Below are positions 1,471 to 54,431 of a stretch of 64,000 bases of DNA, in pieces (within the stretch, counting starts at the first letter, position 1; every line of letters begins with the position of its first letter). The position numbers and the translations under genes were made by a program. The stretch is from positions 1 through 64,000 of IMG/VR virus record IMGVR_UViG_3300028676_000003; one strand, written 5' to 3'. The notes under the pieces are model-generated. The model was given only the letters and a program-made list of their open reading frames with translations, was not told the DNA's origin and did no database searches.

Positions 1471-1520
1471 AAAATAACCTGGTGAAAATTTTGCTAGGTT
1501 ATTTTTTTTGTTTACCTTTG
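1471..1520 (+). promoter_or_regulatory. Bacteroidota-type promoter overlapping a hairpin
   Basis: TTTG 1490-1493, 19-nt spacer, TACCTTTG 1513-1520; AAAATAACCT/AGGTTATTTT inverted repeat. Confidence 0.8.
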
Positions 1521-1548
1521 TAGTATAATAATTGAAAAACGATTAATT

Positions 1549-2019
1549 ATGGAACATCAAGTAATAACAAAAGACTGGGGAGACTCACTAAGAGTTAGTC
1601 ATAACATCTATTTTGAGATAACAAGTCCTAAATCACGGGCCTCATATCTTATGATGGTTGATGATTATTTTAACCAAGACTTAACCAACAATAGGTCACA
1701 CGCAACTAGGTCTAAATGGATTCAATTCAGTAGAGATTTCCTTACAAGGCATCTTAAGAAGTGGGGTAACCTTTACTGCACATATTGCGGAAATGGTAAC
1801 CTGAGAATAGAACTAACCAACGGTGAGAAAAGGGTTAGAGGTAAAAAACGTGAAAACGTTATTCACCCTAGCGAAAAAGCAACCATTGACCACATTGACC
1901 CAAAGTCTAAGGGTGGAGCATTGGAAGACCCAAAGAACATTACTATTTGTTGTGAGAAGTGCAACGGTAAAAAAGGTAGTTCAGACGTACTAGCGTTTCT
2001 AGGATATAAATCTAAATAA
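1549..2019 (+). CDS. HNH endonuclease
   Basis: CTYC...ATIDHIDPKSKGG...NITICCEKCNGKKG. Confidence 0.85.
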   Translation: MEHQVITKDWGDSLRVSHNIYFEITSPKSRASYLMMVDDYFNQDLTNNRSHATRSKWIQFSRDFLTRHLKKWGNLYCTYCGNGNLRIELTNGEKRVRGKKRENVIHPSEKATIDHIDPKSKGGALEDPKNITICCEKCNGKKGSSDVLAFLGYKSK

Positions 2020-2090
2020 AACCAGGTTTTTCTTGCAAATAAGAAATCTTTTATTTACCTTTGTACTATTAATAACTTAAATCATTTGAT

Positions 2091-2453
2091 ATGAAATCAT
2101 TCTCAATATTCACTTTATTAAGTGAAAAATTAGTTGGTAAACAACTTAAACATATCACACACTTCGAAAGGCTAGAACAAGAAATTAACATTTCTGTTAA
2201 AAGACCCACAGCAACTGAAAAACAATTTGAGGGTGGTAACCCTAGATTTAGAATGAACATAGCTTCATCAAAACATTTAGGTTTTAGAACAATTTATGAT
2301 TATTCAGAAGTTGTTAAAGTTGAATTTGAACAAGGTCATTATGATGAAAGTGATTCAATCTTAATCACTCTTGCAAACGGTAAAGAGATTGATATGAGTC
2401 TTAGTTCAGAACTCATTGAAGTAGACAAGGACGTATTTTATTTAGACTATTAA
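2091..2453 (+). CDS. hypothetical protein
   Basis: 120-aa ORF after promoter box 2056-2063. Confidence 0.7.
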   Translation: MKSFSIFTLLSEKLVGKQLKHITHFERLEQEINISVKRPTATEKQFEGGNPRFRMNIASSKHLGFRTIYDYSEVVKVEFEQGHYDESDSILITLANGKEIDMSLSSELIEVDKDVFYLDY

Positions 2454-2463
2454 AAATAAACAA

Positions 2464-2925
2464 ATGGGAACATACAGAGGTAGTTATCTTGGAATTTATT
2501 TAGAAGTTCCATTTTTAAAGCATGAGGAAACAGTTACATTTTTTCGTAATCCTGTTAGCGGGAAGCCAATGAAAAAACGTTTTAATCCTGAAACTGGTGT
2601 TGAAGGAGTTAAAGACACTAGAGTTGACGTTAGTTATCTAACACCAAACCCATATATTGATGATGTTGAGGGTGTTAGAGCAGATGAATTTTCTAGACCC
2701 GCATATACTGGTGGTGGAAAACGAATAGAAACATTCGTTTTAAGTTATTCTGGTAAATATAAAATTGGTGAAGCTGGCGAACTTGAAAATATTGATATAA
2801 GTGATATCAATGTACCAAAGTTAATTGAAGAGTTTAAGGTTGATTATGCTTGGCATTTGGAACAATACACAGATTGGTATAAAGAAGTTAATGTTAAATT
2901 CGGGCTTGTTAATTACGCCCACTAA
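2464..2925 (+). CDS. hypothetical protein, paralog of 2938-3417
   Basis: Shared YLGxYLxVP, RNxxG...FxPxTGxE and VKFGxVNY motifs. Confidence 0.75.
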   Translation: MGTYRGSYLGIYLEVPFLKHEETVTFFRNPVSGKPMKKRFNPETGVEGVKDTRVDVSYLTPNPYIDDVEGVRADEFSRPAYTGGGKRIETFVLSYSGKYKIGEAGELENIDISDINVPKLIEEFKVDYAWHLEQYTDWYKEVNVKFGLVNYAH

Positions 2926-2937
2926 AATCAAATAATC

Positions 2938-3417
2938 ATGGGAGCAGACAACTCAACATATATTGGACCTTACCTGATAGTTCCATATAAAACAATAAAA
3001 GGTATTGATAAACACTACAGAAATGCATCAGGTATTAAGATGGATTCAAAATTTGACCCATCAACTGGTAAAGAGAACACGCTTGTTGAAGTTCCGTATG
3101 AAAGAAAAACTAGTCCTTGGACCGAGTTTGACGAATATGAGTCCTTGACGGCTGATGAACTCAATGAGTTAGAGGAAAATATGTTTTGGGTGCCACAGTA
3201 TACTGGTTCTAAGAAAGAAACAAGCATCTTTTTGGTTAATACAACGAAAGATTTCCTAAAGGATGAAGAAGATGCTTATCACTATGACTTGCAAACCGTG
3301 GATATTCCTGCTGAGTTGCTTAAGTTCAGACGCAAGTATCAAAAATACTTAGATGCTATCAAAAAAGAATATGGTAGTATTGAGGTTAAGTTCGGAGTTG
3401 TAAATTATTTTAACTAA
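2938..3417 (+). CDS. hypothetical protein, paralog of 2464-2925
   Basis: Same shared motifs. Confidence 0.75.
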   Translation: MGADNSTYIGPYLIVPYKTIKGIDKHYRNASGIKMDSKFDPSTGKENTLVEVPYERKTSPWTEFDEYESLTADELNELEENMFWVPQYTGSKKETSIFLVNTTKDFLKDEEDAYHYDLQTVDIPAELLKFRRKYQKYLDAIKKEYGSIEVKFGVVNYFN

Positions 3418-3427
3418 ATAAATTAAT

Positions 3428-3850
3428 ATGAAAGAGTTTTTATACGATATGTTGATTGACCCGTTTACTGATAATGAAGCTATGAGTTATATTATGGGTA
3501 TTATTGCTTGGTTTATTTTTCTAACACTAAGTTTTTTCCTTTTTATTTTCCTATATTGGATAATTGATAGTTCATTTATGCCAATACAAGAAAAAGATGG
3601 TGTAGTTATAGGTACAAAGTATTCACCTGCCCATAGTTCAACAACTTATACTCACGTTGGAGACGTACTAGTTCCAAATACTGTTTATTATGATGAAAGC
3701 TTCTATGTTGTAATCGAGATAGATGGTTTAAAAGATGATGTTGAGGTTTATGAAGGTTATTACAATAGCGTTGAAAAGGGAACTAAGGTACATTGTAAGT
3801 ATACCAATGGTAGAATTGGTGATAACCTATATATAAAATCATTCGAATAA
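3428..3850 (+). CDS. membrane-anchored hypothetical protein
   Basis: N-terminal TM helix followed by a beta-rich domain. Confidence 0.7.
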   Translation: MKEFLYDMLIDPFTDNEAMSYIMGIIAWFIFLTLSFFLFIFLYWIIDSSFMPIQEKDGVVIGTKYSPAHSSTTYTHVGDVLVPNTVYYDESFYVVIEIDGLKDDVEVYEGYYNSVEKGTKVHCKYTNGRIGDNLYIKSFE

Positions 3851-4155: not shown

Positions 4156-4231
4156 ATATTTAATCCTAATAAGTTGTTTATTAGGATTTTTTTTTATACC
4201 TTTGTATCATATTAATTAAAAACATTAAATT

Positions 4232-5224: not shown

Positions 5225-5533
5225 ATGCAGAAGAAGAACGAATTTATTAAACGTTTGATTAAGCGTTTTAAGAAACCACTAGATGTTAAGGTAGGTGATG
5301 TAGGAGTATTTCAAGACGTATTGACGTTCTACACCAGTAATCAACATGCCGATGTAACACGACATAGTGTATTTACAAAGATTGAAGTCGTTGAAGTGTT
5401 TGAAGAATTGGTTGAGGTTAAGATTCTTGATATGGAAGTAGCAAATATTGCTCCCGTATCGTTCTTAGAAATGGCTAAGGCCAGTAATACCAAGTACTTG
5501 GACCCAAGACTTATCAATTGGAAAAAAAATTAA
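5225..5533 (+). CDS. hypothetical protein
   Basis: 102-aa ORF. Confidence 0.7.
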   Translation: MQKKNEFIKRLIKRFKKPLDVKVGDVGVFQDVLTFYTSNQHADVTRHSVFTKIEVVEVFEELVEVKILDMEVANIAPVSFLEMAKASNTKYLDPRLINWKKN

Positions 5534-5587
5534 TATTTTCCCTATCATTTATTTGGTAGGGAAATTTTTTTTACGTACCTTTGTAAT

Positions 5588-5827
5588 ATGAAAGATAAAG
5601 AAAAAGTAATAACCGACCATTTAAAGAGTGTAGTATTGAGCGAACCTGTTCGTCCAACCTTTCCCGAAGATAGACAAGAACCGTCTTTTGGTAAAAGGAT
5701 TAGACTATACGATAGTGAACAAGTTGATACTATCTTAACTGACGTATTAACACAAGTCCTAGAAGGTAAAATCGAATTAACCAATACACTTGCTATTGAA
5801 GCATTTGTTAAAAACTATAAAAAATGA
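5588..5827 (+). CDS. hypothetical protein
   Basis: After promoter box 5576-5583. Confidence 0.7.
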   Translation: MKDKEKVITDHLKSVVLSEPVRPTFPEDRQEPSFGKRIRLYDSEQVDTILTDVLTQVLEGKIELTNTLAIEAFVKNYKK

Positions 5828-15140: not shown

Positions 15141-15164
15141 CCACACCTAGATAAAAGATATATA

Positions 15165-15211
15165 AAATCCCAATGAACATTTGTTTTATTGGGATTTTTT
15201 TTGTACCTTTG
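15165..15211 (+). promoter_or_regulatory. terminator hairpin overlapping the promoter for array block B
   Basis: AAAATCCCAAT/ATTGGGATTTT inverted repeat; TACCTTTG 15204-15211. Confidence 0.75.
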
Positions 15212-15215
15212 TTTT

Positions 15216-18200
15216 ATGGAATTAGGTAAACGTATAAATCGACACATACCAAGTGACTTTACTGATACAGTAATGATTACTCTTGATGATATAATCATGC
15301 GGATAAGTGTTGCAGGTAAGTCTTCTATTGATGTAAGTGGTTTAAGACTTAGCCCATTTTTATTTACATTATTTAGAAACATATCATTATGAAATTAGGT
15401 GAAAATATAAACAAACATGTACCAAATTATTTTACAGATGTGGTTATTGTTACATTTGCTAATAATACAATAATTAGCTTAGGTGTTAGAGGGAAATGTA
15501 AAATTAGAGAATTAAACCTTGACAGTTATATGTTTAGAATGTTTAGGGGTAAATTATTATGAAATTAGGAAGCACCAAGAAAGAAACAATAATGTATTTT
15601 ATTGATTTAGTCAATAAAAATTCATTCAAGGTAGCCTATGCTAGACTTGATTGTAGTATTCCTATATTCAATCAGGTAAGCCAAGGTATTAACATTATAA
15701 GAACATCAAGAGACAATGAACTTAGGTAAATTTAAATCAGCACCAAACATAAGAATCGCTATGGATATGATTCAGCGAAACCTTCAAAACAAATACATTG
15801 TTAATACTGGTGGTTTTGTACATAAGTACATGCCTAATCGTATGGGAGAAGTTATGCAAGAACGTTACACCTTATTGATATCTGATGATTCTAGGTGAGC
15901 CAAGAAGAGACAAATTGGATAAAAGTATATCAAATGATATAAGTTTTCCAATTATACAGAAAGGTCGAGAGACCTTAGAGTATGAACTATGGTCTAAAAT
16001 CAAAAATGACCTTGGAATTAAGGTAATGGATTCAACACCAAGAGTAACAAAGATTTATAACAAAATAGATATATGAGAAAACTTATACAAATAGGTAAAC
16101 CACTTCAACGAAAGTTTAATAATACTATGACTAATAGATTGTTAACTAGACTTAGTAATCGTGTTGAAAAAGACCTTGCATTTCCGTTGATTGAAGATTT
16201 AGTTAATAGCTACAAAACAGAGGATATAAGCGATTTTATGTCTTTATATATTAAAGTAAAACACGTAAATGCAGATGGATTTATTGGATGGTCAGCAGGT
16301 AGAGGTGTCGATGTTGGGCATGTCTTTGACGAATAGAACACGTCCCTTAAAAATTCACATACAACAAACAATATCTCATAAATGTGTTGATATTATTGGT
16401 GTGAACACCTACAACGATGTTAATGTTATTTTAACAAATCGGGTTATCCGAGCGGTTAATTTCGAAATCCGTAAAATACGTAAACCATGAAACTAGGGAA
16501 TAAAACAGATGTAAATACCGTAACTAATGCTTTACATGAGCTTAAGTGGGATATTGTTTGGGATGCTGTTGCGAAAGAAACAGGACTTGATAATATGGGA
16601 ACAGTGAGTGAAGCGATTTGGGATAAGATAGACGATGAATTATTCTTTGATTTTTATTATATTGACTCAATAAATCCAACATATCCATGAAATTAGGTAA
16701 ACAAAGAAGTAATCCAATTCGTTCACTTATTCAGTCTCTTGCTTATACAAAGTTTTGGGATGAAAGTTTTAGTGCTACAAAACCTGAGTTATGGAATGAT
16801 ATAAGCAGAAAGACTTGGGATAGAGTAAACAATGAAATAATTCCAATATCAGTTAGGAGTGAAATTAGGTAAACCAATACAAGATATAGTCACTAAGGCG
16901 GTTAAAAATCTATGTTACTATAAGTTATGGAATGATACCACAGCTGTAACTGACCGTGATTTATGGGAAGACTTAGCTGTTAGGATGTGGGATAACGGAT
17001 TTAATATAGAGATAAGTGAAATTAGGTAATCCAATAGGACAATATAAACATGTAACAATGCTGAATAATTTAGCGTTGTCAATCAGATGTAATGATGAAG
17101 ACTATGATATAGCTGATATTGTATTATGGGAAGGTGTAAAACAAGCAATAGGAAATGGAGAAGTTAGTCTTAGGAGAATTTATAGGGGTTAACCTAACCA
17201 AGCTTATAAATAAAAATCAATTGGATATGGATAAAATACTCTATTTGAAGGTTAATAACCTTGATTTTGATAACGTATTCAATGACATTTATAATAGCGT
17301 AACAAGAAACATTCAATTCAGACACTTGATTGAGGAACATATCTTGTATGACAGAGAACAAAGAGATGCAGTTAATCAAATGTTACCTTTTTAATATGGA
17401 ACTAGGAGATACAATATACTACGAAATGCGAAATAAGATATCAGATAATATTTGGTTTGTACTTGCAGATGAGAACTTGAACATTCAAACCGAAATTGGT
17501 AATGAAATTAATGAAGAAATTTGGGAAAAACAAATCATTTTTCCTAGTAGAGGTGAAATGATTTAATATGAAATTAGGTGAAAGACAACTAACAAAAATA
17601 CTAATAATCAATGATGTTAACACAATAATTAATATTGATTTGCGTCGAATATATTATAACGAAAGAATTAATTTCACTGGTAGTACGCTTCTAGGGAATT
17701 TAAGAATTATTAATTTAACTTGGAGTATACGTGAACTTAGGTAAAAGTAAATCAGAGAATTTTGAAGATTTAAATAAAGAACATAAGAAAGACTTACATG
17801 AGAATATTAAGGTTTCTCTTGATAGAGTATGTCTTGATTATTGGGATGATTGGGATAGATGGGCGTCAGGACCCGTAACACAATTAATAAAGGGAATTAG
17901 ACCAAGAGTATATGAATTTAGGAAAACAAATAGACAGCGTTGATTATCGAAATAATGTTCTTATATCGATAAACAATATGGAACAACAAATAAATGCTCC
18001 TAAGTATGATTATGTTCATGGATGGGGGCCTTGGGCTGACCTTGATTGGTTTGTTGATATATTTCATTCAGATTTTAGAGTATGGATTTAGGTATTTCAC
18101 AAGCAAATAAACTATCAGATATTGATAATGAAGGGAGATTTACATTCAGCGAATCAAGTAGATTCAGAATAAAGCTTAGACAAGAGTATTGTGATAAAAG

Positions 18201-18966
18201 GTATAGTGAAGGAGTTTTTATTACAGCAAATTTTAATTTTGTTGACTTAAATATACAAATAAATGAAATTAGGTAATCATACAAGAGAAACATTCTATAC
18301 AGTCCATCATATTTGGGCTAAGTTGCTTGAACGCAATAAGAATGAACGTATAGCTCTAACGCTTTGGAGAAACGTTAATAATTCAACTAATGATAATATA
18401 AGTCTTCAATTGGCTCCATATAAAATAAAACGAGTATGATACTAGGTAATAAGGTTGAATACAAGCCATATAGCGGAATTGGTTGTTATACTAGGGTTTA
18501 TATAAATGGTTTTATGCATAGTCTTATACATAGAATTGTATCAATTAAAGTAACCAGTAGACTAACATTAGGACTACAAAGGATTAGTAACAATAGAATC
18601 ATAATCAATGAAATTAGGTAGACACTTATACGATGTAACGGCAAGTGAAGGTGCTGGAAACATGCAGACTTTCTTCATGATGTATACCTATGGTAAGCTA
18701 GAAACTAAATTGGCTAATTGGATGTATGCTAGAATGATACGAGGTTATGGTAATACGTTACCAATAAATTATAAAGTACTATGGACATGGGGAAATTGGG
18801 ATTAGGAGAGCCGAGGTCGGTAAGTTTAGAACATGACGTAAGGAAACTATCAAACCATATGTTTGACTTGGTATATGATGTTAAACTAGAACACAGACCG
18901 TTCGTAAATACTAACGCTAAGATTAGACGAAATCTAATTGATGTGAGAAATTTACAAGTAAAGTAA
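15216..18966 (+). repeat. MKLG microprotein array, block B (about 21 micro-ORFs)
   Basis: Starts at 15216, 15389, 15559, 15716, 15885, 16073, about 16320, 16487, 16687, 16859, 17016, 17155, 17396, 17568, 17731, 17912, 18082, 18263, 18436, 18608, 18796. Confidence 0.9.
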
Positions 18967-19032
18967 AACTTTTTATCAAATAATTTGGTATATTGAATTA
19001 TTATACATACCTTTGTTAAAAATAAATCAGAT

Positions 19033-19239
19033 ATGAGAGCATTAGTTTGGATTCTTTTATTCATTATACAAGTTATTACTGGCGCAATGACCATTTGTAC
19101 TTGGATTCTTTGGGTAACAAGCTTCCCAACAAAAACAGATATGTTTTATCCTTGTTTTGCATCATTTATTATCTGTAGCTTAGCGTTTATTATTAATCAA
19201 TTCCTGCAACATACGTGGGATAATTACAAAGACAATTAA
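19033..19239 (+). CDS. small membrane protein
   Basis: Two TM helices; promoter box 19008-19015. Confidence 0.7.
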   Translation: MRALVWILLFIIQVITGAMTICTWILWVTSFPTKTDMFYPCFASFIICSLAFIINQFLQHTWDNYKDN

Positions 19240-19242
19240 ATT

Positions 19243-19659
19243 ATGAAAGATTTACAAAGTTTCATTACGGATATGGTTCGTATTGAAGAAATTGAGTCAG
19301 TTCAAGCATTTGGACACTACCCATTTCAATTAATGTCAGAGGGGTCTGATGATTCGTTAACTCTTGCCGTGCTTGACTTAGGTGATGTAATACCTTGCTA
19401 CAAGATATTTGCTGAACACTTAGCGAAGGGTGCCAAAAGAATCTATATGTCTATTGACTTTCCTGCGGGTGGTGACTTAGCAGAAGACTTCGTTGCTGTA
19501 TTCCAATACGAAAACGAAACCTTTAATGTTGTAGCGTTGCCATATGATGCTGAGGGAACACAATCTCCACAAGTAACAACTGAACAAAGCGTTCACTTAA
19601 GTGAACTCAAAACTCAGTTTGAAACGATTGTTAAAACTTTCATTAAGCAAGAGGCTTAA
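19243..19659 (+). CDS. hypothetical protein
   Basis: 138-aa ORF. Confidence 0.75.
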   Translation: MKDLQSFITDMVRIEEIESVQAFGHYPFQLMSEGSDDSLTLAVLDLGDVIPCYKIFAEHLAKGAKRIYMSIDFPAGGDLAEDFVAVFQYENETFNVVALPYDAEGTQSPQVTTEQSVHLSELKTQFETIVKTFIKQEA

Positions 19660-19680
19660 TATCAATCAAAAGAAAAGTTA

Positions 19681-19714
19681 AGGGATAATCTGATTAGTTG
19701 GATTATCCCTTTAT
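19681..19714 (+). terminator. probable terminator hairpin
   Basis: AGGGATAATC/GATTATCCCT followed by TTATT. Confidence 0.65.
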
Positions 19715-35992: not shown

Positions 35993-36056
35993 AAAGATTT
36001 GGTAGTATGGATTTAATTTCTTAGATTTGTCCTATCAATTAAAACACATAGAAATT

Positions 36057-37585: not shown

Positions 37586-37687
37586 ACAAAGGTAAGATAA
37601 AATAATTTAAAAATAAGTCATCATTTATTTGGTGGCTTATTTTTTTTGTTTTATATTTGCCTTATCAAACTAAAACACATACACAAA

Positions 37688-37981
37688 ATGGAAAATTCAA
37701 AATTAAAATCAGCAGTCTATACAAATCCTACGGGACTAATGAAAACCGAAAGATACCTAGTTGAAACACAAGAGGACTTAAACGCATTTCTTAAGGCATT
37801 CCCTGAGAATAAACAGTTTCTAGGTAAAACACTTAAAGAAGACGTTGAAAGAGGTAAAATCGTTTTGCTTACAGATATAACCCTGAGCGGTTTTAGTTCA
37901 TATTGTTATGAAACGATTGTAGGTAAAAGAGATATTATCACATTGCATCCTTCAAGTTTTATTCGTGTAACATCTAAATAA
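37688..37981 (+). CDS. hypothetical protein
   Basis: After hairpin/promoter module (box 37652-37659). Confidence 0.7.
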   Translation: MENSKLKSAVYTNPTGLMKTERYLVETQEDLNAFLKAFPENKQFLGKTLKEDVERGKIVLLTDITLSGFSSYCYETIVGKRDIITLHPSSFIRVTSK

Positions 37982-38598: not shown

Positions 38599-39372
38599 AT
38601 GAGTAAAGAAGTTAAAAGAAAACCATTATTAAGCACTAATAATCACAAAACGATTAAAGGCGAAAAGGTTGGTTATAAAACGTATATTCTTTATATGTCG
38701 CCTTTTAAGGCTAACAGCAAAGGTAAAAACGTTTGTTCCCACGCATCGACGGGTTGTGCTGAAAGTTGCTTAGCGGGTTCGGGTTTTGGTGGTATGTACG
38801 TTAATGTTAAAAACGGGCGTGTTGCAAAAACTGAGTATTTTTTAAGTAGTCGTACTGAATTTCTTTATCAGATTAAATCTGAGATTGAAAAGGCTATTAA
38901 AAAAAATGAAGCGTCAAACCTAAAGAATGACGAAAAGACTATCTTAACATTTCGTTTAAATGGAACAAGTGATATTGCATACGAAAAGTTTAGAGTTTTT
39001 GAAGGGAACAAAAACATTTTTGAAGTTTTTCCTGACGTACAATTTTACGATTATACAAAGAACTATTTAAGATTTGACAAGGTGTTACCTGCAAATTATC
39101 ACTTAACATTTAGCCGTTCAGAGACAAACGATGTTAAGGCTATGGAAATTCTTAAAAAGGGTTATAACGTTGCAATTGTTTTCGATAACGTTCCTAAAAC
39201 CTACAAGGGTTATGAAGTGGTAAACGGAGACAATGACGACCTGAGATTCTTAGATAAAAAGAATGTAGTCGTAGGATTGAAATATAAGAAAATGACGGGC
39301 AAAGGTGCTGACAATAAAAAGGCTTTTGAAAGTGGTTTTGTTATTCAAAACAAAGAATTGCAATTAACATAA
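38599..39372 (+). CDS. gp88-like protein (Cys-cluster phage family)
   Basis: NVCSHASTGCAESCL, FRLNGTSDI, FYDYTK, NYHLTFSRSE and GDNDDLRFLD motifs. Confidence 0.75.
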   Translation: MSKEVKRKPLLSTNNHKTIKGEKVGYKTYILYMSPFKANSKGKNVCSHASTGCAESCLAGSGFGGMYVNVKNGRVAKTEYFLSSRTEFLYQIKSEIEKAIKKNEASNLKNDEKTILTFRLNGTSDIAYEKFRVFEGNKNIFEVFPDVQFYDYTKNYLRFDKVLPANYHLTFSRSETNDVKAMEILKKGYNVAIVFDNVPKTYKGYEVVNGDNDDLRFLDKKNVVVGLKYKKMTGKGADNKKAFESGFVIQNKELQLT

Positions 39373-39431
39373 AATAATTTAAAAATAACTATCAATATAT
39401 TTGGTAGTTATTTTTTTTATGTCTATCTTTG
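39373..39431 (+). promoter_or_regulatory. hairpin-terminator/promoter module
   Basis: AAAATAACTATC/GGTAGTTATTTT with TTTG at the loop edge; TATCTTTG 39424-39431. Confidence 0.8.
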
Positions 39432-39457
39432 ACTTAACAAATTAAAACACACACATT

Positions 39458-39838
39458 ATGAAACTATCATTATCAAAAGAAGAGATTAACAAAGTATTTT
39501 TAGATGTTCTTTGCAACGGTGCTATCGGGTTTTTAGCTCAGTCAGACGTTGAAATGACATATTCTGACGAAGACTACCAAAAGGTACGTGAAAATGGAGA
39601 TTGTTACGAAGACGTTCTTTTAAAGATTATCAACACAGGTGGTAAGTTGGAGTTTGTCGATACTGAGGGCGACGAGTCGAAAACTCTTACACTTGAAGTG
39701 TTAACCAAGGCACTGACAAATATTGAAAACCAAGACTTTGCCGATTACGTTTTAACTCTATTAAAAGAAGAGGGAGACGCTGAAATTGGTTTATGTGTAT
39801 TGCAGTATATTCTGTATGACGATGTTATCTTTGGATAA
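39458..39838 (+). CDS. hypothetical phage protein
   Basis: Ends LQYILYDDVIFG. Confidence 0.75.
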   Translation: MKLSLSKEEINKVFLDVLCNGAIGFLAQSDVEMTYSDEDYQKVRENGDCYEDVLLKIINTGGKLEFVDTEGDESKTLTLEVLTKALTNIENQDFADYVLTLLKEEGDAEIGLCVLQYILYDDVIFG

Positions 39839-39898
39839 AAATAATATAACCTATCATTAATTTGATAGGTTTTTTTGTATATAGATTTATTTGACTAT

Positions 39899-39950
39899 AA
39901 GGCAGGACGGAGTCTACGTCTCAGGTGTTCAGCCTTGCTTTGTAATCTGA
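39899..39950 (-). ncRNA. putative small RNA, GTAGACTCC family copy b
   Basis: Minus-strand TACATTTA box at 39953-39960; GAGACGTAG-ACTCCGTC-CTGC. Confidence 0.5.
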
Positions 39951-40052
39951 TGTAAATGTACAACAAATAAATTTAATATCCTAATGAAATAAATTTTTTT
40001 ATTCAAAAACTTTGCATTATATTTGTCCTATCAAACTAAAACACATACACAG

Positions 40053-40544
40053 ATGGAAACTAATAAAGCTTACAGTAAAGTACTGACAGAAAAAAAAGAA
40101 GTTGCATTCTTTAAAAAGATTGACTCTTATAAAAATGAATTGGATTGCAAAGAAGCACGTACCCTAATGTATGGCGGTGTTAATTTGCATGTGAAACTAA
40201 ATAAATCTATTTCAATTGTTCCACTTAAAAAAGTAGATTTTGGATATATCATTTATCTATCGAATAATGTTCTTAGTGTTGGAGATTTTCTTTTTATATC
40301 AAATTGGGAGTTTGCCGAAATTGAACGTTTAGGATTAACACTAGACAAAGAACAGAATTTCAACGGTTGGAGACATTTTTGGTTTGCTGATAAGGTTATA
40401 GCTGAGTTTGTTAATCCTTTGGAAGTTCTACAAAAGCAACTTAATACTGCTAAAAACGAGAGAGACAATCTTAACGATACAATAGAACGTTACGAAAAGG
40501 AACAAATTGATTTTATTAAACGTTTTCAAAAGCAAATAAAATAA
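40053..40544 (+). CDS. hypothetical protein with C-terminal coiled coil
   Basis: Promoter box 40018-40025. Confidence 0.7.
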   Translation: METNKAYSKVLTEKKEVAFFKKIDSYKNELDCKEARTLMYGGVNLHVKLNKSISIVPLKKVDFGYIIYLSNNVLSVGDFLFISNWEFAEIERLGLTLDKEQNFNGWRHFWFADKVIAEFVNPLEVLQKQLNTAKNERDNLNDTIERYEKEQIDFIKRFQKQIK

Positions 40545-40545
40545 G

Positions 40546-40698
40546 ATGGAAAAATTATTTATAAAGAATAACTTAGAATATCCTTATTTTACAATAACAA
40601 CACTTAAGGTAAAAGACTACGCCTTAAGTGTTATTGAACAAATGAATATAGGAAATGTAGTAACCCTCAACAAAGAAGCAATAAAAAGAATAAAATAA
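40546..40698 (+). CDS. 50-aa hypothetical protein
   Basis: Open frame filling the gap. Confidence 0.5.
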   Translation: MEKLFIKNNLEYPYFTITTLKVKDYALSVIEQMNIGNVVTLNKEAIKRIK

Positions 40699-40768
40699 AT
40701 GTTAAAAAATTAGGTTATATGAAACTAATAATATATCTTTGACCTAACAATCTAAAACACATATAAAA

Positions 40769-41143
40769 ATGGAAAAATCAGTATTTTTAAAAGAGGTTAA
40801 AGCAGAACTAGACACTATCAAAAGTAGAGCAACCGAAGCAGAAATTGCTAGGTTGAATTTTGAAACTTTTGAGCATGATTCAAGAACTGCTTGTATTTAC
40901 GGTCAAATGACTGGTAATTGTGACGGTCAACGAGCTAACAGCTTGCAAGAAAAAACTTATGATAGGGTTCAAATTGAAGGCGAGTGCGTTTCTCCTACAT
41001 ATAACCCATTTAAAAAACAGGACTTTTCTAAAGGAAATTCTTACACAGCCTTGGAAAAATATTTGTTTATGGTAAAGCCTGTAACACACGGTAAAATCAT
41101 ACAATACCTTAAAGGAGAAATTAATAAAATAACTCTTAGATAA
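40769..41143 (+). CDS. hypothetical protein, paralog of 37178-37585
   Basis: See 37178; promoter box 40734-40741. Confidence 0.75.
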   Translation: MEKSVFLKEVKAELDTIKSRATEAEIARLNFETFEHDSRTACIYGQMTGNCDGQRANSLQEKTYDRVQIEGECVSPTYNPFKKQDFSKGNSYTALEKYLFMVKPVTHGKIIQYLKGEINKITLR

Positions 41144-41149
41144 ATCAAT

Positions 41150-41245
41150 ATGAAACTAGAAAAATTTATTATCGTTTTACCATATGCAATTATGGTTGGG
41201 TTGGTTTTATTATTCGTGTTGAATGTTCACACTAAAAACCACTAA
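41150..41245 (+). CDS. 31-aa single-TM microprotein
   Basis: MKLEKFIIVLPYAIMVGLVLLFVLNVHTKNH*. Confidence 0.55.
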   Translation: MKLEKFIIVLPYAIMVGLVLLFVLNVHTKNH

Positions 41246-41247
41246 AG

Positions 41248-41733
41248 TTGAATAAAGATATACTTGTAGTCCTAAAGACTAAAGAACCCCTATTTTGGGA
41301 GAGCGACAAATTTGACATAAACAAGGTTTATCGTTGTTTACCCGTTGAGAATGAGTATATTATCAATGGGAATCCGTTTACACTTGAAGAGTACGAAATG
41401 TATTTCGAATTGGCTTATGATAGAGTAATCAGGGATTGGACAGAGATAGGACTTGTAAAAGATGGAAAACCGATTTTCTATAAGGAATTTAAGGAACTGT
41501 TTGAGGTTGTAACATACGGCAAACAAATCAATAACTTAAGAATTGGTTTTGTTGGAAAACCTAAAGAGAACTATTACAAGTTTTACCCTAATGTTGATGC
41601 GAATAAACAGATTCAACTTAGAGAAATGTATACTATGTATGAATATACGCTAAATGGCGAACTCTACTTTTTAGATAATGGTAGCATACAATTTGGAACA
41701 TTTGGCAGATATATCAGTTACATAAGAAAATAA
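41248..41733 (+). CDS. hypothetical protein
   Basis: 161 aa, TTG start. Confidence 0.65.
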   Translation: MNKDILVVLKTKEPLFWESDKFDINKVYRCLPVENEYIINGNPFTLEEYEMYFELAYDRVIRDWTEIGLVKDGKPIFYKEFKELFEVVTYGKQINNLRIGFVGKPKENYYKFYPNVDANKQIQLREMYTMYEYTLNGELYFLDNGSIQFGTFGRYISYIRK

Positions 41734-41815
41734 TTTAAAAATAACTATCGATTTATTTGGTAGTTATTTTTTTTTACATTATCTTTGACTTATCAAACTA
41801 AAACATATAGAAATT

Positions 41816-42274
41816 ATGAAATGGACTTACGCACAAATTACAGAATGCACACCAAGACTAAAAAACCATTTATGTGCGGTATATAATTTTATACACTTGC
41901 ATAAGGGTTCAGAGAATCCAAAGCTTAAATCAATTGATTTTACCGTTGAAGGTGTATCGCTTGCAAAGCGTATACTAGACAAGTCAAACACGTCAGATAT
42001 TGTAATGGAGAAATTTGTTACTAACTTCTTAGATAGTCTTACAGCGATTGAAACAATGGCAATGATTCAACCAAGTGCAAAGATTTTCTTTTTTAAAACC
42101 GTAGATACTGAGGTTAACGGTATTGTAGAATCAATTGAGATTGGCGAAGAAGTTGTGTTTAATGACTTTGATATGGAAGAAATGAAATACAATATCGGGA
42201 TTCAAAAGAGACGTTATCCAAAGTTAAATCTTATCTATAAAAATTATATTCCTGCTGAGGTAGAAATTTATTAA
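41816..42274 (+). CDS. hypothetical protein
   Basis: After module with box 41780-41787. Confidence 0.7.
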   Translation: MKWTYAQITECTPRLKNHLCAVYNFIHLHKGSENPKLKSIDFTVEGVSLAKRILDKSNTSDIVMEKFVTNFLDSLTAIETMAMIQPSAKIFFFKTVDTEVNGIVESIEIGEEVVFNDFDMEEMKYNIGIQKRRYPKLNLIYKNYIPAEVEIY

Positions 42275-42337
42275 AAAACATTTGGTAGATTGAAATATTA
42301 TACATATCTTTGAAATATCAAAATAAAACAAAATACA

Positions 42338-42664
42338 ATGACAAAGACATTAAAGGTTATAGCAACAGGTTTGGTTCTAGGGAACTATTGGGGCGGTGGT
42401 CATGGTATATATGCTATGACAGTATTAGAAGCTGATTCAAAAGAAGAGCTTTTAAAGTTAGCTAATGAGGGTTTAAAAGATGGCTCATTAGATGATGGAA
42501 TGGGTTTTGAATCTCTTAGAGGTGCAATGCTCGATATTACGTTAAAAACCTCGATAACGTATGAGGACGAAGAGTATATCAATGAGAAGTATCAATTTGA
42601 TTCCGTTGGAACTCTTACAGTTGAGGAGTACGATATTTTAGAACGAACACTTTTAGGATTATGA
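42338..42664 (+). CDS. hypothetical phage protein
   Basis: GLVLGNYWGGGHG...LDDGMGFESLRGA. Confidence 0.7.
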   Translation: MTKTLKVIATGLVLGNYWGGGHGIYAMTVLEADSKEELLKLANEGLKDGSLDDGMGFESLRGAMLDITLKTSITYEDEEYINEKYQFDSVGTLTVEEYDILERTLLGL

Positions 42665-42951
42665 CAATTTCATTCAAAAAGTATAAAGGTCATTTAGAAT
42701 ATGGCTTTTATGGAAACAACAGAACCGCAATAAAATTAATAGATTCAACTGATGGCAGTCTAATTGCCGTTGCAAGTGTTAACCTCGTTGATGAGGACTT
42801 GAAAGATGATGAGATAGCTATCAAAGACCATGCCGAAAATGAAGGTATGTTAAAAAGTCTTATTGATGCTGAGGTGGTAAGCGAACCAATTCGATATGTC
42901 GAAAAGGGTTATGTAAAAATTCCTATCTGTAAACTATTAAAAACTAAATAG
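42661..42951 (+). CDS. DUF4313-like protein
   Basis: YGNNRTAIKL...ASVNL...IKDHAENEG...GYVKIPIC pattern. Confidence 0.5.
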   Translation: MTISFKKYKGHLEYGFYGNNRTAIKLIDSTDGSLIAVASVNLVDEDLKDDEIAIKDHAENEGMLKSLIDAEVVSEPIRYVEKGYVKIPICKLLKTK

Positions 42952-42957
42952 ATTAAT

Positions 42958-52177: not shown

Positions 52178-52272
52178 AAACTTTTAAGTTTTAGTGAAAA
52201 TAACCCGTCATTTATTTGGTGGGTTATTTTTTTATACCTATATTTGTCTTATCAAACTAAAACACACACATT

Positions 52273-52567: not shown

Positions 52568-52828
52568 ATGGAAAGAAACTCAATTTGGCAAAGCAACGGG
52601 ATAACATTTGGTTATCCTCAATGCTGTATAGATTCATTTTGCACTACTCACGGCTTTATGAATGCTGACGAAAATCAAAGAACTGTAGTGCAAAACGGCT
52701 TCGGGTTTATACCTTGTGCAACGCATGCAAAACAGATACTTAACAACGAAATAACAATTGAAAGTCTTATAAAGAATCGTGACCCTGAAATTAACGATTT
52801 TCCAAACGACCAACTAAGAAAACGATAA
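52568..52828 (+). CDS. Cys-containing hypothetical protein
   Basis: FGYPQCCIDSF...GFIPCATHA. Confidence 0.7.
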   Translation: MERNSIWQSNGITFGYPQCCIDSFCTTHGFMNADENQRTVVQNGFGFIPCATHAKQILNNEITIESLIKNRDPEINDFPNDQLRKR

Positions 52829-52849
52829 ACCAAATAAAACTATTTAGTT

Positions 52850-53119
52850 ATGAATACAAATGTAACAACACATCAAATAAATTCAAGTTCTGGACATTCC
52901 AGAGATTGGATTGATGCAGGTTTAACTTATGAGCAACAAAACAACCTAAATACTATAGGTTATACAGGAAGCTTAAACGGTGTTAAAACAAGTCAGGAAG
53001 CCTATTTAGAAAGCATTTCAACTGAAACCGTAGTATATAGACTTGTTCACTTAACATCTAATAATATGGATTTTAGTGATAAAGCTTTATTGATTAAGGT
53101 AGAAATATCAAAAGAATAA
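52850..53119 (+). CDS. hypothetical protein
   Basis: 89 aa, followed by hairpin ACCCTGAT/ATCAGGGT plus T run. Confidence 0.65.
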   Translation: MNTNVTTHQINSSSGHSRDWIDAGLTYEQQNNLNTIGYTGSLNGVKTSQEAYLESISTETVVYRLVHLTSNNMDFSDKALLIKVEISKE

Positions 53120-53239
53120 CGTAAGACCCTGATAATCAACATCAGGGTTTTTTATTTGAAATTATTTTCATTTTATAGTTGGATATATCAAATATAATAC
53201 TATCTTTGCATAGTAATAAGAAACCAACTAAATACACAC

Positions 53240-53587
53240 ATGAAAACACTTACACTTAAAACCGCAAACTCAATTGTTAACTTTTTAGACCTTGCAACAA
53301 CGCCACTAGAACCAATGCAATTGAAACGTAGAATAGTTACTCTAAGAACGTTTATTAATAGATTGATGCGTACACCTCAAAGAATAGAAAACATCGAATT
53401 AAGACCCTTAACAGTTTCAACTGATTATGAAGTTGAAGACGGCAAAGAAACAATCGTACAAACTTACACATCTAAGTTAGGCGGTGTAATCAACACACGT
53501 ATTGAAACTTACAAAAACAAACAAGTTGTAAGAGTATTCGCAAATATAGACAATGTATTCTTAACACGTAAAAACTTTATAGATTAG
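53240..53587 (+). CDS. hypothetical protein
   Basis: After promoter box 53201-53208. Confidence 0.7.
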   Translation: MKTLTLKTANSIVNFLDLATTPLEPMQLKRRIVTLRTFINRLMRTPQRIENIELRPLTVSTDYEVEDGKETIVQTYTSKLGGVINTRIETYKNKQVVRVFANIDNVFLTRKNFID

Positions 53588-53762
53588 TTTTAGTTGGTAG
53601 TGCCAGCAATGGCACGGGATTGAGCGGGGGTTGTGCCCCGCTTATTTTCTAAAGACTAAAATAAATAAAAAAAAAACACTAAAATAATTTGGTAGTATCA
53701 AAATAATTACTATCTTTACAAAGAATTTAAAAACACACATTAATCCAATTAAAACACTACAC

Positions 53763-54101
53763 ATGAACACACAAGCAATTAAAGTTATCACAGTTGATTA
53801 TCCTATTGAAATGACAGTTGATTTTTGCGAAACTGAATTATCATTCGGGAACATTGGAATTATCCAAATCAAAACGGCTGACGACGAAACACCAAAAGGA
53901 ATCCTATTCAACTCACTACTGGACAAACACGATAAAATTAAAGCTATTCAATTGGATGCTTTGGATTATCATAGAGTACTTTATTTTGATATTGAAGTAA
54001 TCAGAATCAAAAATCCTAACTTATCAGCTGAAGACCTTATGCACTTAACAACTGCACATATCACAACTCTTTACAATCAACAATTATTCACTAAAATCTA
54101 A
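53763..54101 (+). CDS. hypothetical protein
   Basis: 112-aa ORF. Confidence 0.7.
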   Translation: MNTQAIKVITVDYPIEMTVDFCETELSFGNIGIIQIKTADDETPKGILFNSLLDKHDKIKAIQLDALDYHRVLYFDIEVIRIKNPNLSAEDLMHLTTAHITTLYNQQLFTKI

Positions 54102-54105
54102 AGAC

Positions 54106-54354
54106 ATGAAAAAGTTATTTGTTCTTACTGTTATGCTCGCTTTGTTTGTCGCTTGTAGCGAATCAAAACCAAAGATTCAAACTAAGATAAACCCGCACCG
54201 CACCGCTTTTAAGCTAAACAATGAAAGTATTGACCTTGGCAAAGATGGAATTGTAACCGCTTCAAATAAGCATACATTTATTATCATTAACAACCTCATG
54301 CCAAACATGAATGTTTTACATGATACGGACTGTAAAAAATGTCATATAAAATAA
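54106..54354 (+). CDS. putative lipoprotein
   Basis: MKKLFVLTVMLALFVAC signal; C-terminal HDTDCKKCH. Confidence 0.7.
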   Translation: MKKLFVLTVMLALFVACSESKPKIQTKINPHRTAFKLNNESIDLGKDGIVTASNKHTFIIINNLMPNMNVLHDTDCKKCHIK

Positions 54355-54431
54355 TTTGAAAATAACCTATCATTTATTTGGTAGGTTATTTTTTTATACC
54401 TATCTTTACGAAGTATTTAAAAACCAATACT

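What the first reader, a model, noticed from the sequence alone, without database searches (positions are those of the whole stretch)
1471..54410. Mobile-looking hairpin-terminator/promoter modules with compensatory stem changes
Seen: repeated intergenic units AAATAATTT(A/G)AAAATAA-stem-loop-TTTGGT..TTATTTTTT-TAnnTTT(G/A) near 37601, 39373, 41731, 44281, 52195 and 54352, with related ones at 1471, 4160, 5537, 15165 and 51260. Stems covary: AACTATC/GGTAGTT, AGTCATC/GGTGGCT, ACCCGTC/GGTGGGT, ACCTATC/GGTAGGT, CCCTATC/GGTAGGG. The -33 TTTG sits at the loop edge, so one element both terminates the upstream unit and restarts transcription. Established analogy: promoter stem-loop (PeSL) cassettes that shuffle genes in T4-type phages.
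Basis: partly seen in the sequence, partly recalled or inferred. Interest (0 to 1): 0.6.

Follow-up and report, generated by a model that had tools for sequence, protein, structure and literature searches.

The report
Terminator-promoter gene junctions in jumbo phage
About a dozen ~85-base junctions between small genes of a 369-kb T4-like phage of Bacteroidota combine a terminator-like hairpin with a host-type promoter, the Bacteroidota counterpart of the known PeSL cassettes of T4-type coliphages; it is a real and tidy feature but not a new principle.

Summary
The window is the first 64 kb of a complete 368.5-kb T4-like jumbo myovirus from peat. It holds 13 intergenic modules, all on the coding strand. 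Each runs: upstream stop codon in an A-rich box, a 9-17-bp hairpin, a T-rich tract (T7-9 in the strict copies), a TAnnTTTG box, a ~20-nt A-rich leader, then ATG.

The hairpin's loop or descending arm carries the Bacteroidota -33 element, extended here to TTTGGTRG. The T-tract doubles as the -33/-7 spacer. Promoter geometry matches 12 hairpin-less promoters in the same window.

Stem covariation is strong: 97% of cells paired in 10 copies, and 95.8% against 73% shuffled in 84 copies from related phages. Frequent G-U pairs and strict co-orientation with genes favour an RNA hairpin.

Conservation stops sharply at -30 and +55; the flanking genes are unrelated. In two pairs of related phages, 33 of 40 homology-block ends lie in such promoter modules. 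This cannot be separated from a plain intergenic bias.

The same design occurs at host loci such as Prevotella tRNA promoters.

Termination, start sites and recombination in this genome are not shown. Best reading: a PeSL-like analogue built on a different promoter class.

The parts
1466..1548 (+). Module w1490. The hairpin holds -33 TTTGCTAG in its loop/3' arm, followed by T8 and a -7 box TACCTTTG ending at 1520. The upstream stop is at 1454 and the ATG at 1549.
   Evidence: CM hit at 38.9 bits. Fold -16.5 kcal/mol, z -7.1. Context.
4156..4231 (+). Related module. The 11-bp hairpin spans 4162-4188 with GTTG in its loop, followed by T9 and a -7 box TACCTTTG at 4197-4204. The upstream stop is at 4155 and the ATG at 4232.
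   Evidence: Sequence. Fold -10.3 kcal/mol, z -3.3. The CM does not find it.
5529..5587 (+). Module w5552. The stem is TTCCCTATC/GGTAGGGAA, followed by T8 and a -7 box ending at 5583. The ATG at 5588 is only 4 nt after the -7 box, so the mRNA is probably leaderless.
   Evidence: CM hit at 71.2 bits. Fold -15.3 kcal/mol. Context.
15160..15215 (+). Module w15180. The -33 TTTG lies inside the loop, the stem is TCCCAAT/ATTGGGA, followed by T8 and TACCTTTG. The ATG at 15216 opens the array of tiny ORFs and is probably leaderless.
   Evidence: CM hit at 30.7 bits. Fold -14.4 kcal/mol. Context.
37600..37687 (+). Core module w37628. It has the A-box, a 15-bp hairpin at 37609-37644 (AGTCATC/GGTGGCT), T8 and a -7 box TATATTTG ending at 37659. 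The leader is CCTTATCAAACTAAAACACA and the ATG is at 37688.
   Evidence: Fold -15.9 kcal/mol, z -8.8.
39372..39457 (+). Core module w39400. The A-box begins at the last base of the GP88-like gene's TAA stop (39370-39372). The stem is AACTATC/GGTAGTT, followed by T8. The -7 box ends at 39431 and the ATG is at 39458.
39838..39889 (+). It has a perfect 9-bp hairpin AACCTATC.../...GATAGGTT with TTTGATAG, followed by T7 and a -7 box TAGATTTA. It closes the single-gene unit 39458-39838.
   Evidence: CM hit at 37.5 bits. Fold -12.8 kcal/mol. Terminator scan.
41728..41815 (+). Core module w41756. The upstream gene's stop TAA (41731-41733) lies inside the A-box. The stem is AACTATC/GGTAGTT, followed by T9, and the ATG is at 41816.
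44277..44364 (+). Core module w44305. The upstream stop TAA (44280-44282) lies inside the A-box. The stem is the same as at 39400 and 41756, and the ATG is at 44365.
51247..51343 (+). Module w51275. It has the A-box and the hairpin AATCGGAA/TTCCGATT, with the whole TTTGGTAG in the loop. The T-tract is interrupted (TTTTATTT). The -7 box ends at 51305 and the ATG is at 51344.
   Evidence: CM hit at 27.3 bits. Fold -16.5 kcal/mol.
52192..52272 (+). Core module w52215. It has only half of the A-box. The stem is ACCCGTC/GGTGGGT, followed by T7. The -7 box ends at 52246 and the ATG is at 52273.
   Evidence: (76 bits).
54349..54431 (+). Core module w54377. The upstream stop TAA (54352-54354) lies inside the A-box. 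The stem is ACCTATC/GGTAGGT, followed by T7 and a -7 box TATCTTTA. The ATG is at 54432.
   Evidence: 78.6 bits. Fold -17 kcal/mol.
55420..55470 (+). Related module. The hairpin ATGAGA.../...TCTCAT has TTTGTAG in its loop, followed by a T-rich tract and a -7 box TATCTTTA.
   Evidence: Fold -10.3 kcal/mol, z -4.4.
35998..36056 (+). Promoter/leader module without a hairpin. It has the same TTTGGTAG octamer, the same 24-nt -33/-7 register and the same leader (TCCTATCAATTAAAACACA).
42281..42337 (+). Hairpin-less promoter/leader module of the same class.
43491..43550 (+). Hairpin-less promoter/leader module of the same class, with TTTGGTGG.
45818..45917 (+). A separate GC-richer terminator (45818-45839 plus T10), followed 19 nt later by a TTTGGTAG promoter and the conserved leader. 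This is the unfused version of the same junction.
46533..46590 (+). Hairpin-less promoter/leader module of the same class.

Best explanation
The modules are composite gene junctions of the host-sigma-dependent (early-type), ORFan-rich region of a T4-like jumbo phage that infects a member of the Bacteroidota.

Read 5' to 3', one ~85-nt unit supplies:
1. A TAA stop for the upstream gene, inside an A-rich box.
2. An RNA hairpin followed by a U-tract. This acts as an intrinsic terminator or attenuator for transcripts coming from upstream.
3. A complete Bacteroidota primary-sigma promoter on the same DNA. The extended -33 element TTTGGTRG forms the loop edge and descending arm of the hairpin, and the T-tract is the 16-nt spacer to the -7 box TAnnTTTG.
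4. A short A-rich leader without a Shine-Dalgarno sequence, and the ATG of the next gene.

Each flanked gene or small gene group thus becomes an insulated, self-sufficient expression cassette.

Because the same ~85 nt recur between unrelated genes, the modules are also the only stretches of homology in this region. They therefore serve as passive substrates for homologous recombination that inserts, deletes or swaps cassettes, as shown for PeSLs of T4-type coliphages.

Shown here: the anatomy, the covariation, the strand specificity, the promoter register, the sharp conservation boundaries, and module-associated breakpoints in related phages.

Inferred: termination, initiation, and recombination in this genome.
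For: Phage identity:
- Gp23-type capsid protein (201 bits) and T4-type portal (245 bits).
- Tail sheath, tail fibres and DNA polymerase.
- 368,549 bp, CheckV completeness 100%.

Promoter:
- 31 pattern hits against 8.5 expected; the extended form gives 20 against 0.04 expected.
- Sigma-70-type patterns are at chance, 83 against 88.5.
- The consensus and its position relative to start sites are published for Bacteroides and Flavobacterium (PMC7366714, PMC9723704).
- The 24-nt -33/-7 register is identical in promoters with and without hairpins.

Hairpin:
- Folds of -10 to -17 kcal/mol, z down to -8.8.
- Covariation in 10 copies: 97% paired, 0 of 500 shuffles.
- Covariation in 84 distinct copies from this phage and relatives: 95.8% against 73% shuffled, all 14 pairs change on both sides, and slid controls give 45-62%.
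- G-U pairs are frequent, including a near-invariant U-G. These would be A-C mismatches on the other strand.
- Every copy is co-oriented with its genes, including the minus-strand copy at 94597.
- The stop lies 18-42 nt before TTTG and the ATG 23-28 nt after the -7 box in the core copies.

Discreteness: mean pairwise identity is 0.6-0.9 from -30 to +55 and 0.25-0.35 outside.

An unbiased test of the design: of 48 database matches to a pattern that fixed only the A-box, the 3' arm and the T-tract, 37 had a fully complementary 5' arm. Of those, 33 also had a -7 box, against 2 of the 11 non-complementary matches.

Shuffling:
- L043 carries an extra 1.0-kb cassette between two modules where the 96.6%-identical L042 has one module. 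One replacement lies exactly between two modules.
- 7/8, 6/8, 9/12 and 11/12 block ends lie within -40..+110 of a promoter. Against random positions, p = 1e-5 to 2.5e-3.
- None of 93 relatives has the window's neighbours next to the GP88-like gene. The distance from that gene to the next shared gene varies from 1.0 to 8.2 kb.
- One gene (37688-37981) and its AAG...CTT-stem module sit at a different place in G003.

Distribution: all strong copies lie in 1-55 kb and 274-363 kb, outside the structural and replication block. PeSLs show the same pattern (PMC4122927).
Against: - No transcript data exist. No RNA run holds the DNA, so neither 3' ends nor start sites are known.
- The stems are AT-rich, with only 2-4 G-C pairs. 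The three AACTATC copies fail a conventional terminator scan that asks for 3 G-C pairs. They may attenuate rather than terminate.
- The full-length hairpin pairs the A-tract with most of the U-tract.
- The strongly conserved octamer TTTGGTRG goes beyond the published host -33 (TTTG). It could be the site of a phage-encoded factor, which would make these middle rather than early promoters.
- The breakpoint enrichment disappears when the null is restricted to intergenic DNA (p 0.05-0.6), because modules fill 40-75% of the intergenic space.
- The informative relative pairs have few hairpins.
- No recombinant junction or circle was seen in contigs.
Confidence: 0.72

Rival explanations
1. The hairpin is an RNA element but not a terminator. 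It could be a 3'-end protective structure or an RNase processing site that defines stable monocistronic mRNAs from long early transcripts. Alternatively it is a weak attenuator that a phage antiterminator overrides. The promoter part works as described.
For: - The stems are AT-rich with 2-4 G-C pairs, and three copies fail a standard terminator scan.
- The A-tract can pair with most of the U-tract.
- GC-richer, conventional terminators exist elsewhere in the same region, at 45818 and 53621.
Against: - A T7-9 run follows the hairpin at once in every strict copy, and this is conserved across phages and in host loci.
- A processing or stability hairpin would not need the T-run. However, the T-run is also the promoter spacer, so this argument is weak.
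Confidence: 0.15
2. The inverted repeat is a DNA operator. A phage or host regulator would bind as a dimer over the -33 element to switch these promoters off or on during infection, and the RNA hairpin would be incidental.
For: - The palindrome is centred on or next to the -33 element.
- The octamer TTTGGTRG is far more conserved than the host consensus requires.
- The covariance model also scores the minus strand of the strongest copies, though weakly.
Against: - Stem sequences differ between copies while pairing is kept: 5 of 14 pairs in this phage and 14 of 14 across relatives change on both sides. A sequence-specific binding site would not do this.
- G-T wobble positions are frequent and one is nearly invariant, so the repeat is imperfect as duplex DNA.
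- Hairpin position relative to -33 shifts between classes.
- Twelve promoters with the same octamer have no repeat.
Confidence: 0.06
3. The units are copies of a non-autonomous mobile element (MITE- or REP-like) that spread by transposition and happen to resemble regulatory signals.
For: There are many similar copies in one genome, a palindromic core, and presence in several phage lineages.
Against: - All copies are co-oriented with transcription.
- None lies inside a gene.
- The spacing to the upstream stop and to the downstream ATG is fixed.
- The promoter register is identical to that of hairpin-less promoters.
- There are no terminal inverted repeats beyond the stem, no target-site duplications and no transposase nearby.
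- The same design sits at orthologous host tRNA loci across Prevotella species.
Confidence: 0.03
4. The repeats are chance similarity of AT-rich intergenic DNA.
For: The window is 32% G+C, and the intergenic DNA is rich in A and T runs.
Against: - No shuffle reached the observed count of the A-box.
- The extended promoter pattern is found 20 times against 0.04 expected.
- Fold z-scores go down to -8.8.
- None of 500 shuffles reached the observed covariation.
Confidence: 0.01

Closest known systems
PeSLs (promoter-early stem-loops) of T4-type phages RB49/phi1, PST/T4 and nt-1/KVP40 (Arbiol et al. 2010, PMC2839356; Comeau et al. 2014, PMC4122927)
   Same: - Composite intergenic cassette in a T4-like myovirus.
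- The upstream stop codon sits in an AT-rich stretch.
- A host primary-sigma promoter is present.
- A stem-loop may overlap the upstream promoter box; this is one of five published subclasses.
- A leader and start codon follow.
- Conservation over roughly 85-100 bp between unrelated ORFans.
- Concentration in variable early regions and scarcity in structural blocks.
- Indels and replacements between relatives end in or beside the elements.
   Different: - The promoter is of the Bacteroidota -33/-7 type, not sigma-70 -35/-10.
- There is no Shine-Dalgarno sequence.
- Stems are AT-rich without polyG/polyC.
- The T-tract of the terminator is at the same time the promoter spacer.
- There is no sequence homology to PeSLs.
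- Terminator and promoter activity and mini-circles, shown experimentally for PeSLs, are untested here.

By the authors' own usage (the T-even IP-locus elements), this makes it an analogue and not a homologue.
Bacteroidota primary-sigma (sigma-ABfr) promoters, -33 TTTG / -7 TAnnTTTG (PMC7366714 and PMC9723704 for the consensus and its position)
   Same: - A -7 box TAnnTTTG and a TTTG 24 nt upstream (start to start).
- Strong strand bias towards the coding strand.
- The box lies 23-28 nt before the ATG, which fits a start site about 5 nt after the box and a short leader.
   Different: The -33 is extended to a conserved octamer, TTTGGTRG. In 13 cases it is embedded in a hairpin.
Intrinsic (Rho-independent) terminators with an upstream A-tract
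   Same: A hairpin is followed at once by T7-9, sits downstream of a stop codon on the transcribed strand, and has an A-tract that can extend the stem.
   Different: There are only 2-4 G-C pairs. The element is not followed by a spacer but runs straight into a promoter -7 box.
Host terminator-in-promoter junctions found here in Prevotella (upstream of a tRNA gene), Riemerella, Chryseobacterium and Flavobacteriaceae genomes
   Same: The layout is identical: AAAATAA, a 5' arm, a loop ending in TTT, GGTGG(A), TTATTTTTT and a TAnnTTTG box.
   Different: These are single loci per genome with GC-richer arms (CCGCC/GGTGG). They are not a repeated family between ORFans, and nothing suggests a link with gene shuffling.

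Membership tests
PeSL (T4-type phage promoter-early stem-loop cassette) | Lies in intergenic junctions of ORFan-rich, variable regions of a T4-like myovirus | tested here: met
   - Gp23 capsid and T4 portal families are over cut-off.
- All modules are intergenic.
- Flanking genes mostly have no Pfam or PHROG match.
- The neighbours of the GP88-like gene differ in all 93 relatives.
PeSL (T4-type phage promoter-early stem-loop cassette) | Promoter part identical to the sigma-70 -35/-10 consensus | tested here: not met
   Sigma-70-type matches are at chance, 83 against 88.5. The promoter is of the Bacteroidota -33/-7 type. The role is the same (host primary sigma) but the class is different.
PeSL (T4-type phage promoter-early stem-loop cassette) | Stable stem-loop adjacent to or overlapping the promoter boxes | tested here: met
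   Folds and covariation. The stem-loop overlaps or encloses the -33 box.
PeSL (T4-type phage promoter-early stem-loop cassette) | AT-rich region upstream that carries the stop codon of the upstream gene | tested here: met
   The A-box contains the upstream TAA at 41731, 44280 and 54352, and abuts it at 39372 and 51247.
PeSL (T4-type phage promoter-early stem-loop cassette) | Shine-Dalgarno sequence and start codon at the 3' end | tested here: not met
   The leaders are A-rich (…AAACTAAAACACA…) with no purine-rich SD before the ATG. Bacteroidota mRNAs lack SD (PMC6847099 abstract). The start codon is present.
PeSL (T4-type phage promoter-early stem-loop cassette) | Sequence conservation over about 100 bp between otherwise unrelated genes | tested here: met
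   Pairwise identity is 0.6-0.9 from -30 to +55 around TTTG and at background outside.
PeSL (T4-type phage promoter-early stem-loop cassette) | Stem-loop terminates or attenuates transcription and the promoter is active (reporter assays) | not testable with these tools
   No RNA run holds the DNA, and the laid runs are contigs.
PeSL (T4-type phage promoter-early stem-loop cassette) | Indels and replacements between close relatives end in or beside the elements | tested here: inconclusive
   - No close relative covers the window.
- In two related pairs, 33 of 40 block ends lie in promoter modules. Against random positions, p = 1e-5 to 2.5e-3; against intergenic positions only, the result is not significant.
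PeSL (T4-type phage promoter-early stem-loop cassette) | Mini-circles formed by recombination between neighbouring elements | not testable with these tools
   Only assembled contigs were available. The apparent joints are matches to paralogous modules.
Intrinsic terminator | Hairpin followed at once by a U-tract, on the transcribed strand, after a stop codon | tested here: met
   T7-9 follows directly after the stem in the strict copies.
Intrinsic terminator | G+C-rich stem | tested here: inconclusive
   There are 2-4 G-C pairs per stem. Three modules pass the scan and the three AACTATC copies fail it. The energies are still -13 to -17 kcal/mol because of stem length.
Intrinsic terminator | Transcript 3' ends map to the U-tract | not testable with these tools
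   There are no RNA data.
Bacteroidota primary-sigma promoter | -7 box TAnnTTTG with TTTG near -33, upstream of genes on the coding strand | tested here: met
   27 of 31 hits are on the + strand. The consensus is given in PMC7366714 and PMC9723704.
Bacteroidota primary-sigma promoter | Transcription start about 5 nt downstream of the -7 box | not testable with these tools
   There are no RNA data.
MITE/REP-like mobile repeat | Both orientations, terminal repeats with target duplications, presence/absence polymorphism of the unit alone | tested here: not met
   All copies are co-oriented with genes, with fixed distances to the stop and the ATG. No unit-only indel appears in the related pairs.

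The most novel reading that the evidence does not exclude
Placing the terminator's U-tract inside the promoter (between -33 and -7) may not be mere economy of space. It could be a hand-over device. A polymerase that releases its RNA in the T-tract would be sitting on the next promoter. It could then re-initiate there without leaving the DNA, so each cassette would be fed by recycled polymerase while staying insulated from read-through. The same trick at host tRNA promoters would then be a general Bacteroidota mechanism that this globally distributed clade of T4-like jumbo phages has multiplied into a portable gene junction.
Probability: 0.12. Interest if true: 0.7.

Novelty: new variant of a known kind. 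Interest (0 to 1): 0.42.

Why it matters
It extends the PeSL idea (composite terminator/promoter junctions that insulate ORFan cassettes and offer the only homology for shuffling them) from T4-type phages of Proteobacteria to a widespread, uncultured clade of T4-like jumbo phages of Bacteroidota. In these hosts the promoter grammar is quite different.

It gives a compact, sequence-defined part (about 85 nt: stop, terminator, promoter, leader) that could be tested and reused as an insulating junction in Flavobacterium or Bacteroides genetics.

It gives an annotation rule for the transcription units of such phages.

It also shows that an extended -33 octamer, TTTGGTRG, and a terminator-in-promoter layout occur in host genomes too. 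The promoter papers I read here (PMC7366714, PMC9723704) do not mention either.

Tried and rejected
1. Megablast of 36-56 kb against cultured phage genomes gave no match. The nearest cultured relative by tail sheath is only 40% identical: Flavobacterium phage vB_FspM_immuto.

2. I looked for a close relative that covers the window.
- G001 (IMG/VR, 274 kb) is the same phage but starts at window position 63,125.
- The best GP88-like relatives in viral and metagenome contigs are 76% identical or less at protein level.
- An exact-protein look-up of the cassette gene 39458-39838 found only this phage.

3. Contigs of four peat runs were laid on 39300-45299 (6,000 letters).
- All listed joints, and most loose ends, are matches to paralogous modules elsewhere in the genome (for example 35998, 37628, 52215, 58055).
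- A few loose ends belong to other phages in the samples.
- There is no recombinant junction.

4. No RNA run was found.

5. Another genetic code for the ORF-poor stretch at 16-35 kb was rejected. No stop reassignment opens long frames, and the stretch is instead packed with tiny ORFs. The standard code was kept.

6. Sigma-70-type promoters are at chance.

7. A within-genome search for paralogous genes next to modules found almost none. Module copies therefore did not spread by duplication of gene plus module within this genome.

8. The MAFFT alignment A1 misplaced the three shorter stems by one column. I replaced it with the ungapped seed A3 and the model-based alignment A4.

Full report
**What the window is.** The window is the first 64 kb of a single-contig virus record of 368,549 bp with 33.6% G+C. 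CheckV rates the record complete. It encodes a Gp23-type major capsid protein (201 bits) and a T4-type portal (245 bits), as well as a tail sheath, tail fibres and a DNA polymerase. It is therefore a distant T4-like jumbo myovirus. It comes from a peat metagenome, JGI 3300028676. The nearest cultured phage by tail sheath is a Flavobacterium phage at 40% identity.

Almost all genes in the window are small, lie on the + strand and match no known family.

**The observation.** The 17-nt A-box occurs six times exactly. With two mismatches allowed there are 7 hits against 1.5 expected, and no shuffle reaches 7.

A covariance model built from ten ungapped copies recovers eleven sites in the window: 1466, 5529, 15160, 37605, 39377, 39838, 41733, 44282, 51258, 52192 and 54354. 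It also recovers six sites elsewhere in the genome. The sites at 4156 and 55420 have the same layout but are too divergent for the model. All are on the coding strand. The one good minus-strand copy, at 94597, lies between minus-strand genes.

**Anatomy.** In the core copies the upstream gene's TAA lies in or next to the A-box. The hairpin follows, then a T7-9 run, then TAnnTTT(G/A), and the ATG comes 23-28 nt later. Two copies, at 5552 and 15180, have the ATG only 4 nt after the box. Given the published position of this box at -12 to -5 (PMC9723704), their mRNAs would be leaderless.

Mean pairwise identity among copies is 0.6-0.9 from -30 to +55 around the TTTG. On both sides it falls to the background of 0.25-0.35. 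The unit is therefore a discrete ~85-nt module between unrelated genes.

**The promoter part.** The pattern TTTG-N18-21-TANNTTTR occurs 31 times in the window against 8.5 expected, 27 of them on the + strand. This is the published consensus of the Bacteroidota primary sigma factor (PMC7366714). Sigma-70-type patterns are at chance.

The -33 element is extended to the octamer TTTGGTRG in 20 promoters, against 0.04 expected. Twelve of these have no hairpin, yet they keep the same 24-nt register and often the same leader. This has two consequences:
- The modules carry what looks like a fully normal promoter of this phage.
- The descending arm of the hairpin (GGTRG) is fixed by the promoter, and the ascending arm has adapted to it.

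Genome-wide, such promoters fill 0-64 kb and 220-368 kb and are scarce in the structural and replication block.

**The hairpin part.** All thirteen fold as predicted, at -10.3 to -17 kcal/mol and z of -3.3 to -8.8.
- On the ten-copy seed, 97.1% of cells pair. Five of 14 pairs change on both sides (for example U-A to C-G, and C-G to U-A or G-C). No shuffle in 500 reaches this, and sliding the partner drops pairing to 39-61%.
- The model finds 87 copies at E of 0.01 or better in this window and in 27 loci from related phages. In the 84 distinct ones, 95.8% of cells pair against 73% after shuffling, and all 14 pairs show double changes. That alignment was fitted to the model, so it leans towards the structure.
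- G-U pairs are common and one U-G is nearly invariant. On the opposite strand these would be mismatches.

Together with the strict co-orientation, this points to an RNA hairpin in + strand transcripts and not to a DNA operator.

In relatives the hairpin also occurs one step further out, with the whole octamer in the loop. This recalls the positional subclasses of PeSL stem-loops (PMC2839356).

**A test that did not presuppose the hairpin.** I scanned public viral and bacterial contigs for a pattern that fixed only AAAATAA, TTTGGTRG and TTATTTTTT.
- Of 48 matches, 37 had a fully complementary, unconstrained 5' arm.
- Of those 37, 33 also had a -7 box within 22 nt, against 2 of the 11 non-complementary matches.
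- The bacterial matches with the full design are all from Bacteroidota, except L118, whose record is titled only 'MAG: bacterium' and whose module looks phage-like: Prevotella, Riemerella, Chryseobacterium, Flavobacteriaceae.
- In the two Prevotella-group loci checked (L121, L134), a tRNA gene lies beside the module, about 55 nt downstream of it.

The terminator-in-promoter layout is thus a host idiom that the phage has multiplied.

**Is it linked to gene shuffling?** No close relative covers the window.
- The 274-kb IMG/VR record G001 is the same phage starting at position 63,125.
- The best other relatives share 76% or less protein identity in the GP88-like gene.

More distant relatives are informative at gene level.
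- G003 (233 kb) has a collinear region with about 35 such modules, roughly one per gene. It shares only about a dozen genes with the window. One shared gene (37688-37981) sits elsewhere together with a module of matching stem base, and one adjacent pair is swapped.
- Among 93 relatives, none has the window's genes next to the GP88-like gene. The single gene 39458-39838, bounded by two hairpin modules, has no counterpart in these loci.

At nucleotide resolution two pairs of related contigs could be used.
- L042/L043 (96.6% identical): L043 has an extra 1.0-kb cassette between two modules where L042 has one. One replacement lies exactly between two modules, and another insertion ends at the -33 box.
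- L034/L177 (about 89% identical) behaves the same way.
- In all, 33 of 40 internal block ends lie within -40..+110 of a promoter TTTG. This is far more than random positions would give (p from 1e-5 to 2.5e-3). It is no more than expected if breakpoints are simply intergenic, because modules fill 40-75% of intergenic DNA.
- Most modules in these two pairs lack hairpins. What recombines is the conserved promoter/leader junction, and the hairpin is an optional part of it.

**What could not be shown.** No RNA run holds this DNA. The four peat runs are kept as contigs. Laid on 39300-45299, their 'joints' and most loose ends are matches to paralogous modules in the same genome, and a few belong to other phages. 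Termination, start sites, and deletions or circles between modules therefore remain inferences.

**Verdict.** The modules are composite stop/terminator/promoter/leader junctions that work like PeSLs. They fail two literal PeSL criteria (a sigma-70 promoter and a Shine-Dalgarno sequence) because the host phylum uses other signals, and they share no sequence with PeSLs. I file them as a PeSL-like analogue, that is, a new variant of a known kind.

Noticed in passing
window 15216-34700 (+): About 100 back-to-back tiny ORFs (48-82 aa, median spacing 173 nt, many with ATGA overlaps) cover about 71% of 19.5 kb. Eighty-one of them start ATG-(A/G)(A/T)N-(A/C/T)T(A/G)-GG, i.e. M-K/E/N/D-L-G. Beyond that N-terminal motif BLASTP links only one pair. 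Only two promoters, at 15180 and 18984, serve the whole array. No stop-codon reassignment opens longer frames.
   Followed up: partly
window 48961-49639 (+): Three tRNA-like genes by Rfam, at 48961-49036, 49103-49183 and 49566-49638. ARAGORN calls only the last one, with an undetermined anticodon. They lie in a 1.4-kb ORF-free gap downstream of the promoter at 48782.
   Followed up: no
window 5552-5588 and 15180-15216: In two modules the ATG lies 4 nt after the -7 box. This predicts leaderless mRNAs, one of them for the first gene of the tiny-ORF array.
   Followed up: no
window 35059-35090 (-): A full TTTGGTAG...TACCTTTG promoter on the minus strand lies at the border between the tiny-ORF array and the module-rich region. 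It would drive divergent or antisense transcription.
   Followed up: no
window 35998, 45859, 46533, 48782, 58377: Hairpin-less promoters carry, right after TTTGGTAG, short words (TATGGATT, TCTCA, TTCCA) that form the 3' arms of loop-enclosed hairpins in relatives and at 51275 and 55440. Here there is no complementary 5' arm. They may be orphan arms left by recombination inside a module, or simply part of the promoter.
   Followed up: partly
window 40070-40373: The source run holds two alternative 304-nt contigs here. One is identical to the window (depth 43). The other has 13 differences plus small indels (depth 9.7). This is a minor strain variant inside the gene 40053-40544.
   Followed up: no
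L121 3907-4068, L134 6002-6160 and other Prevotella loci: A conserved host junction with the same layout (AAAATAATCCGCC, loop, TTTGGTGGATTATTTTTTTT, TACCTTTG). In the two loci checked (L121, L134) a tRNA gene lies about 55 nt downstream.
   Followed up: partly
L010/L131, L137, L114 and L128 (Riemerella and Flavobacteriaceae): The same junction is followed by a conserved non-coding-looking leader (…GCAGTGCTAAAT…) with no Rfam match. It may be an unannotated small RNA or leader.
   Followed up: no
genome 274133-274179 and 363385-363435: Two further terminator/promoter junctions have a loop that carries ATTAGGTT in place of TTTG, before a T7 run and TACCTTTG. This may be a variant upstream promoter element.
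   Followed up: no
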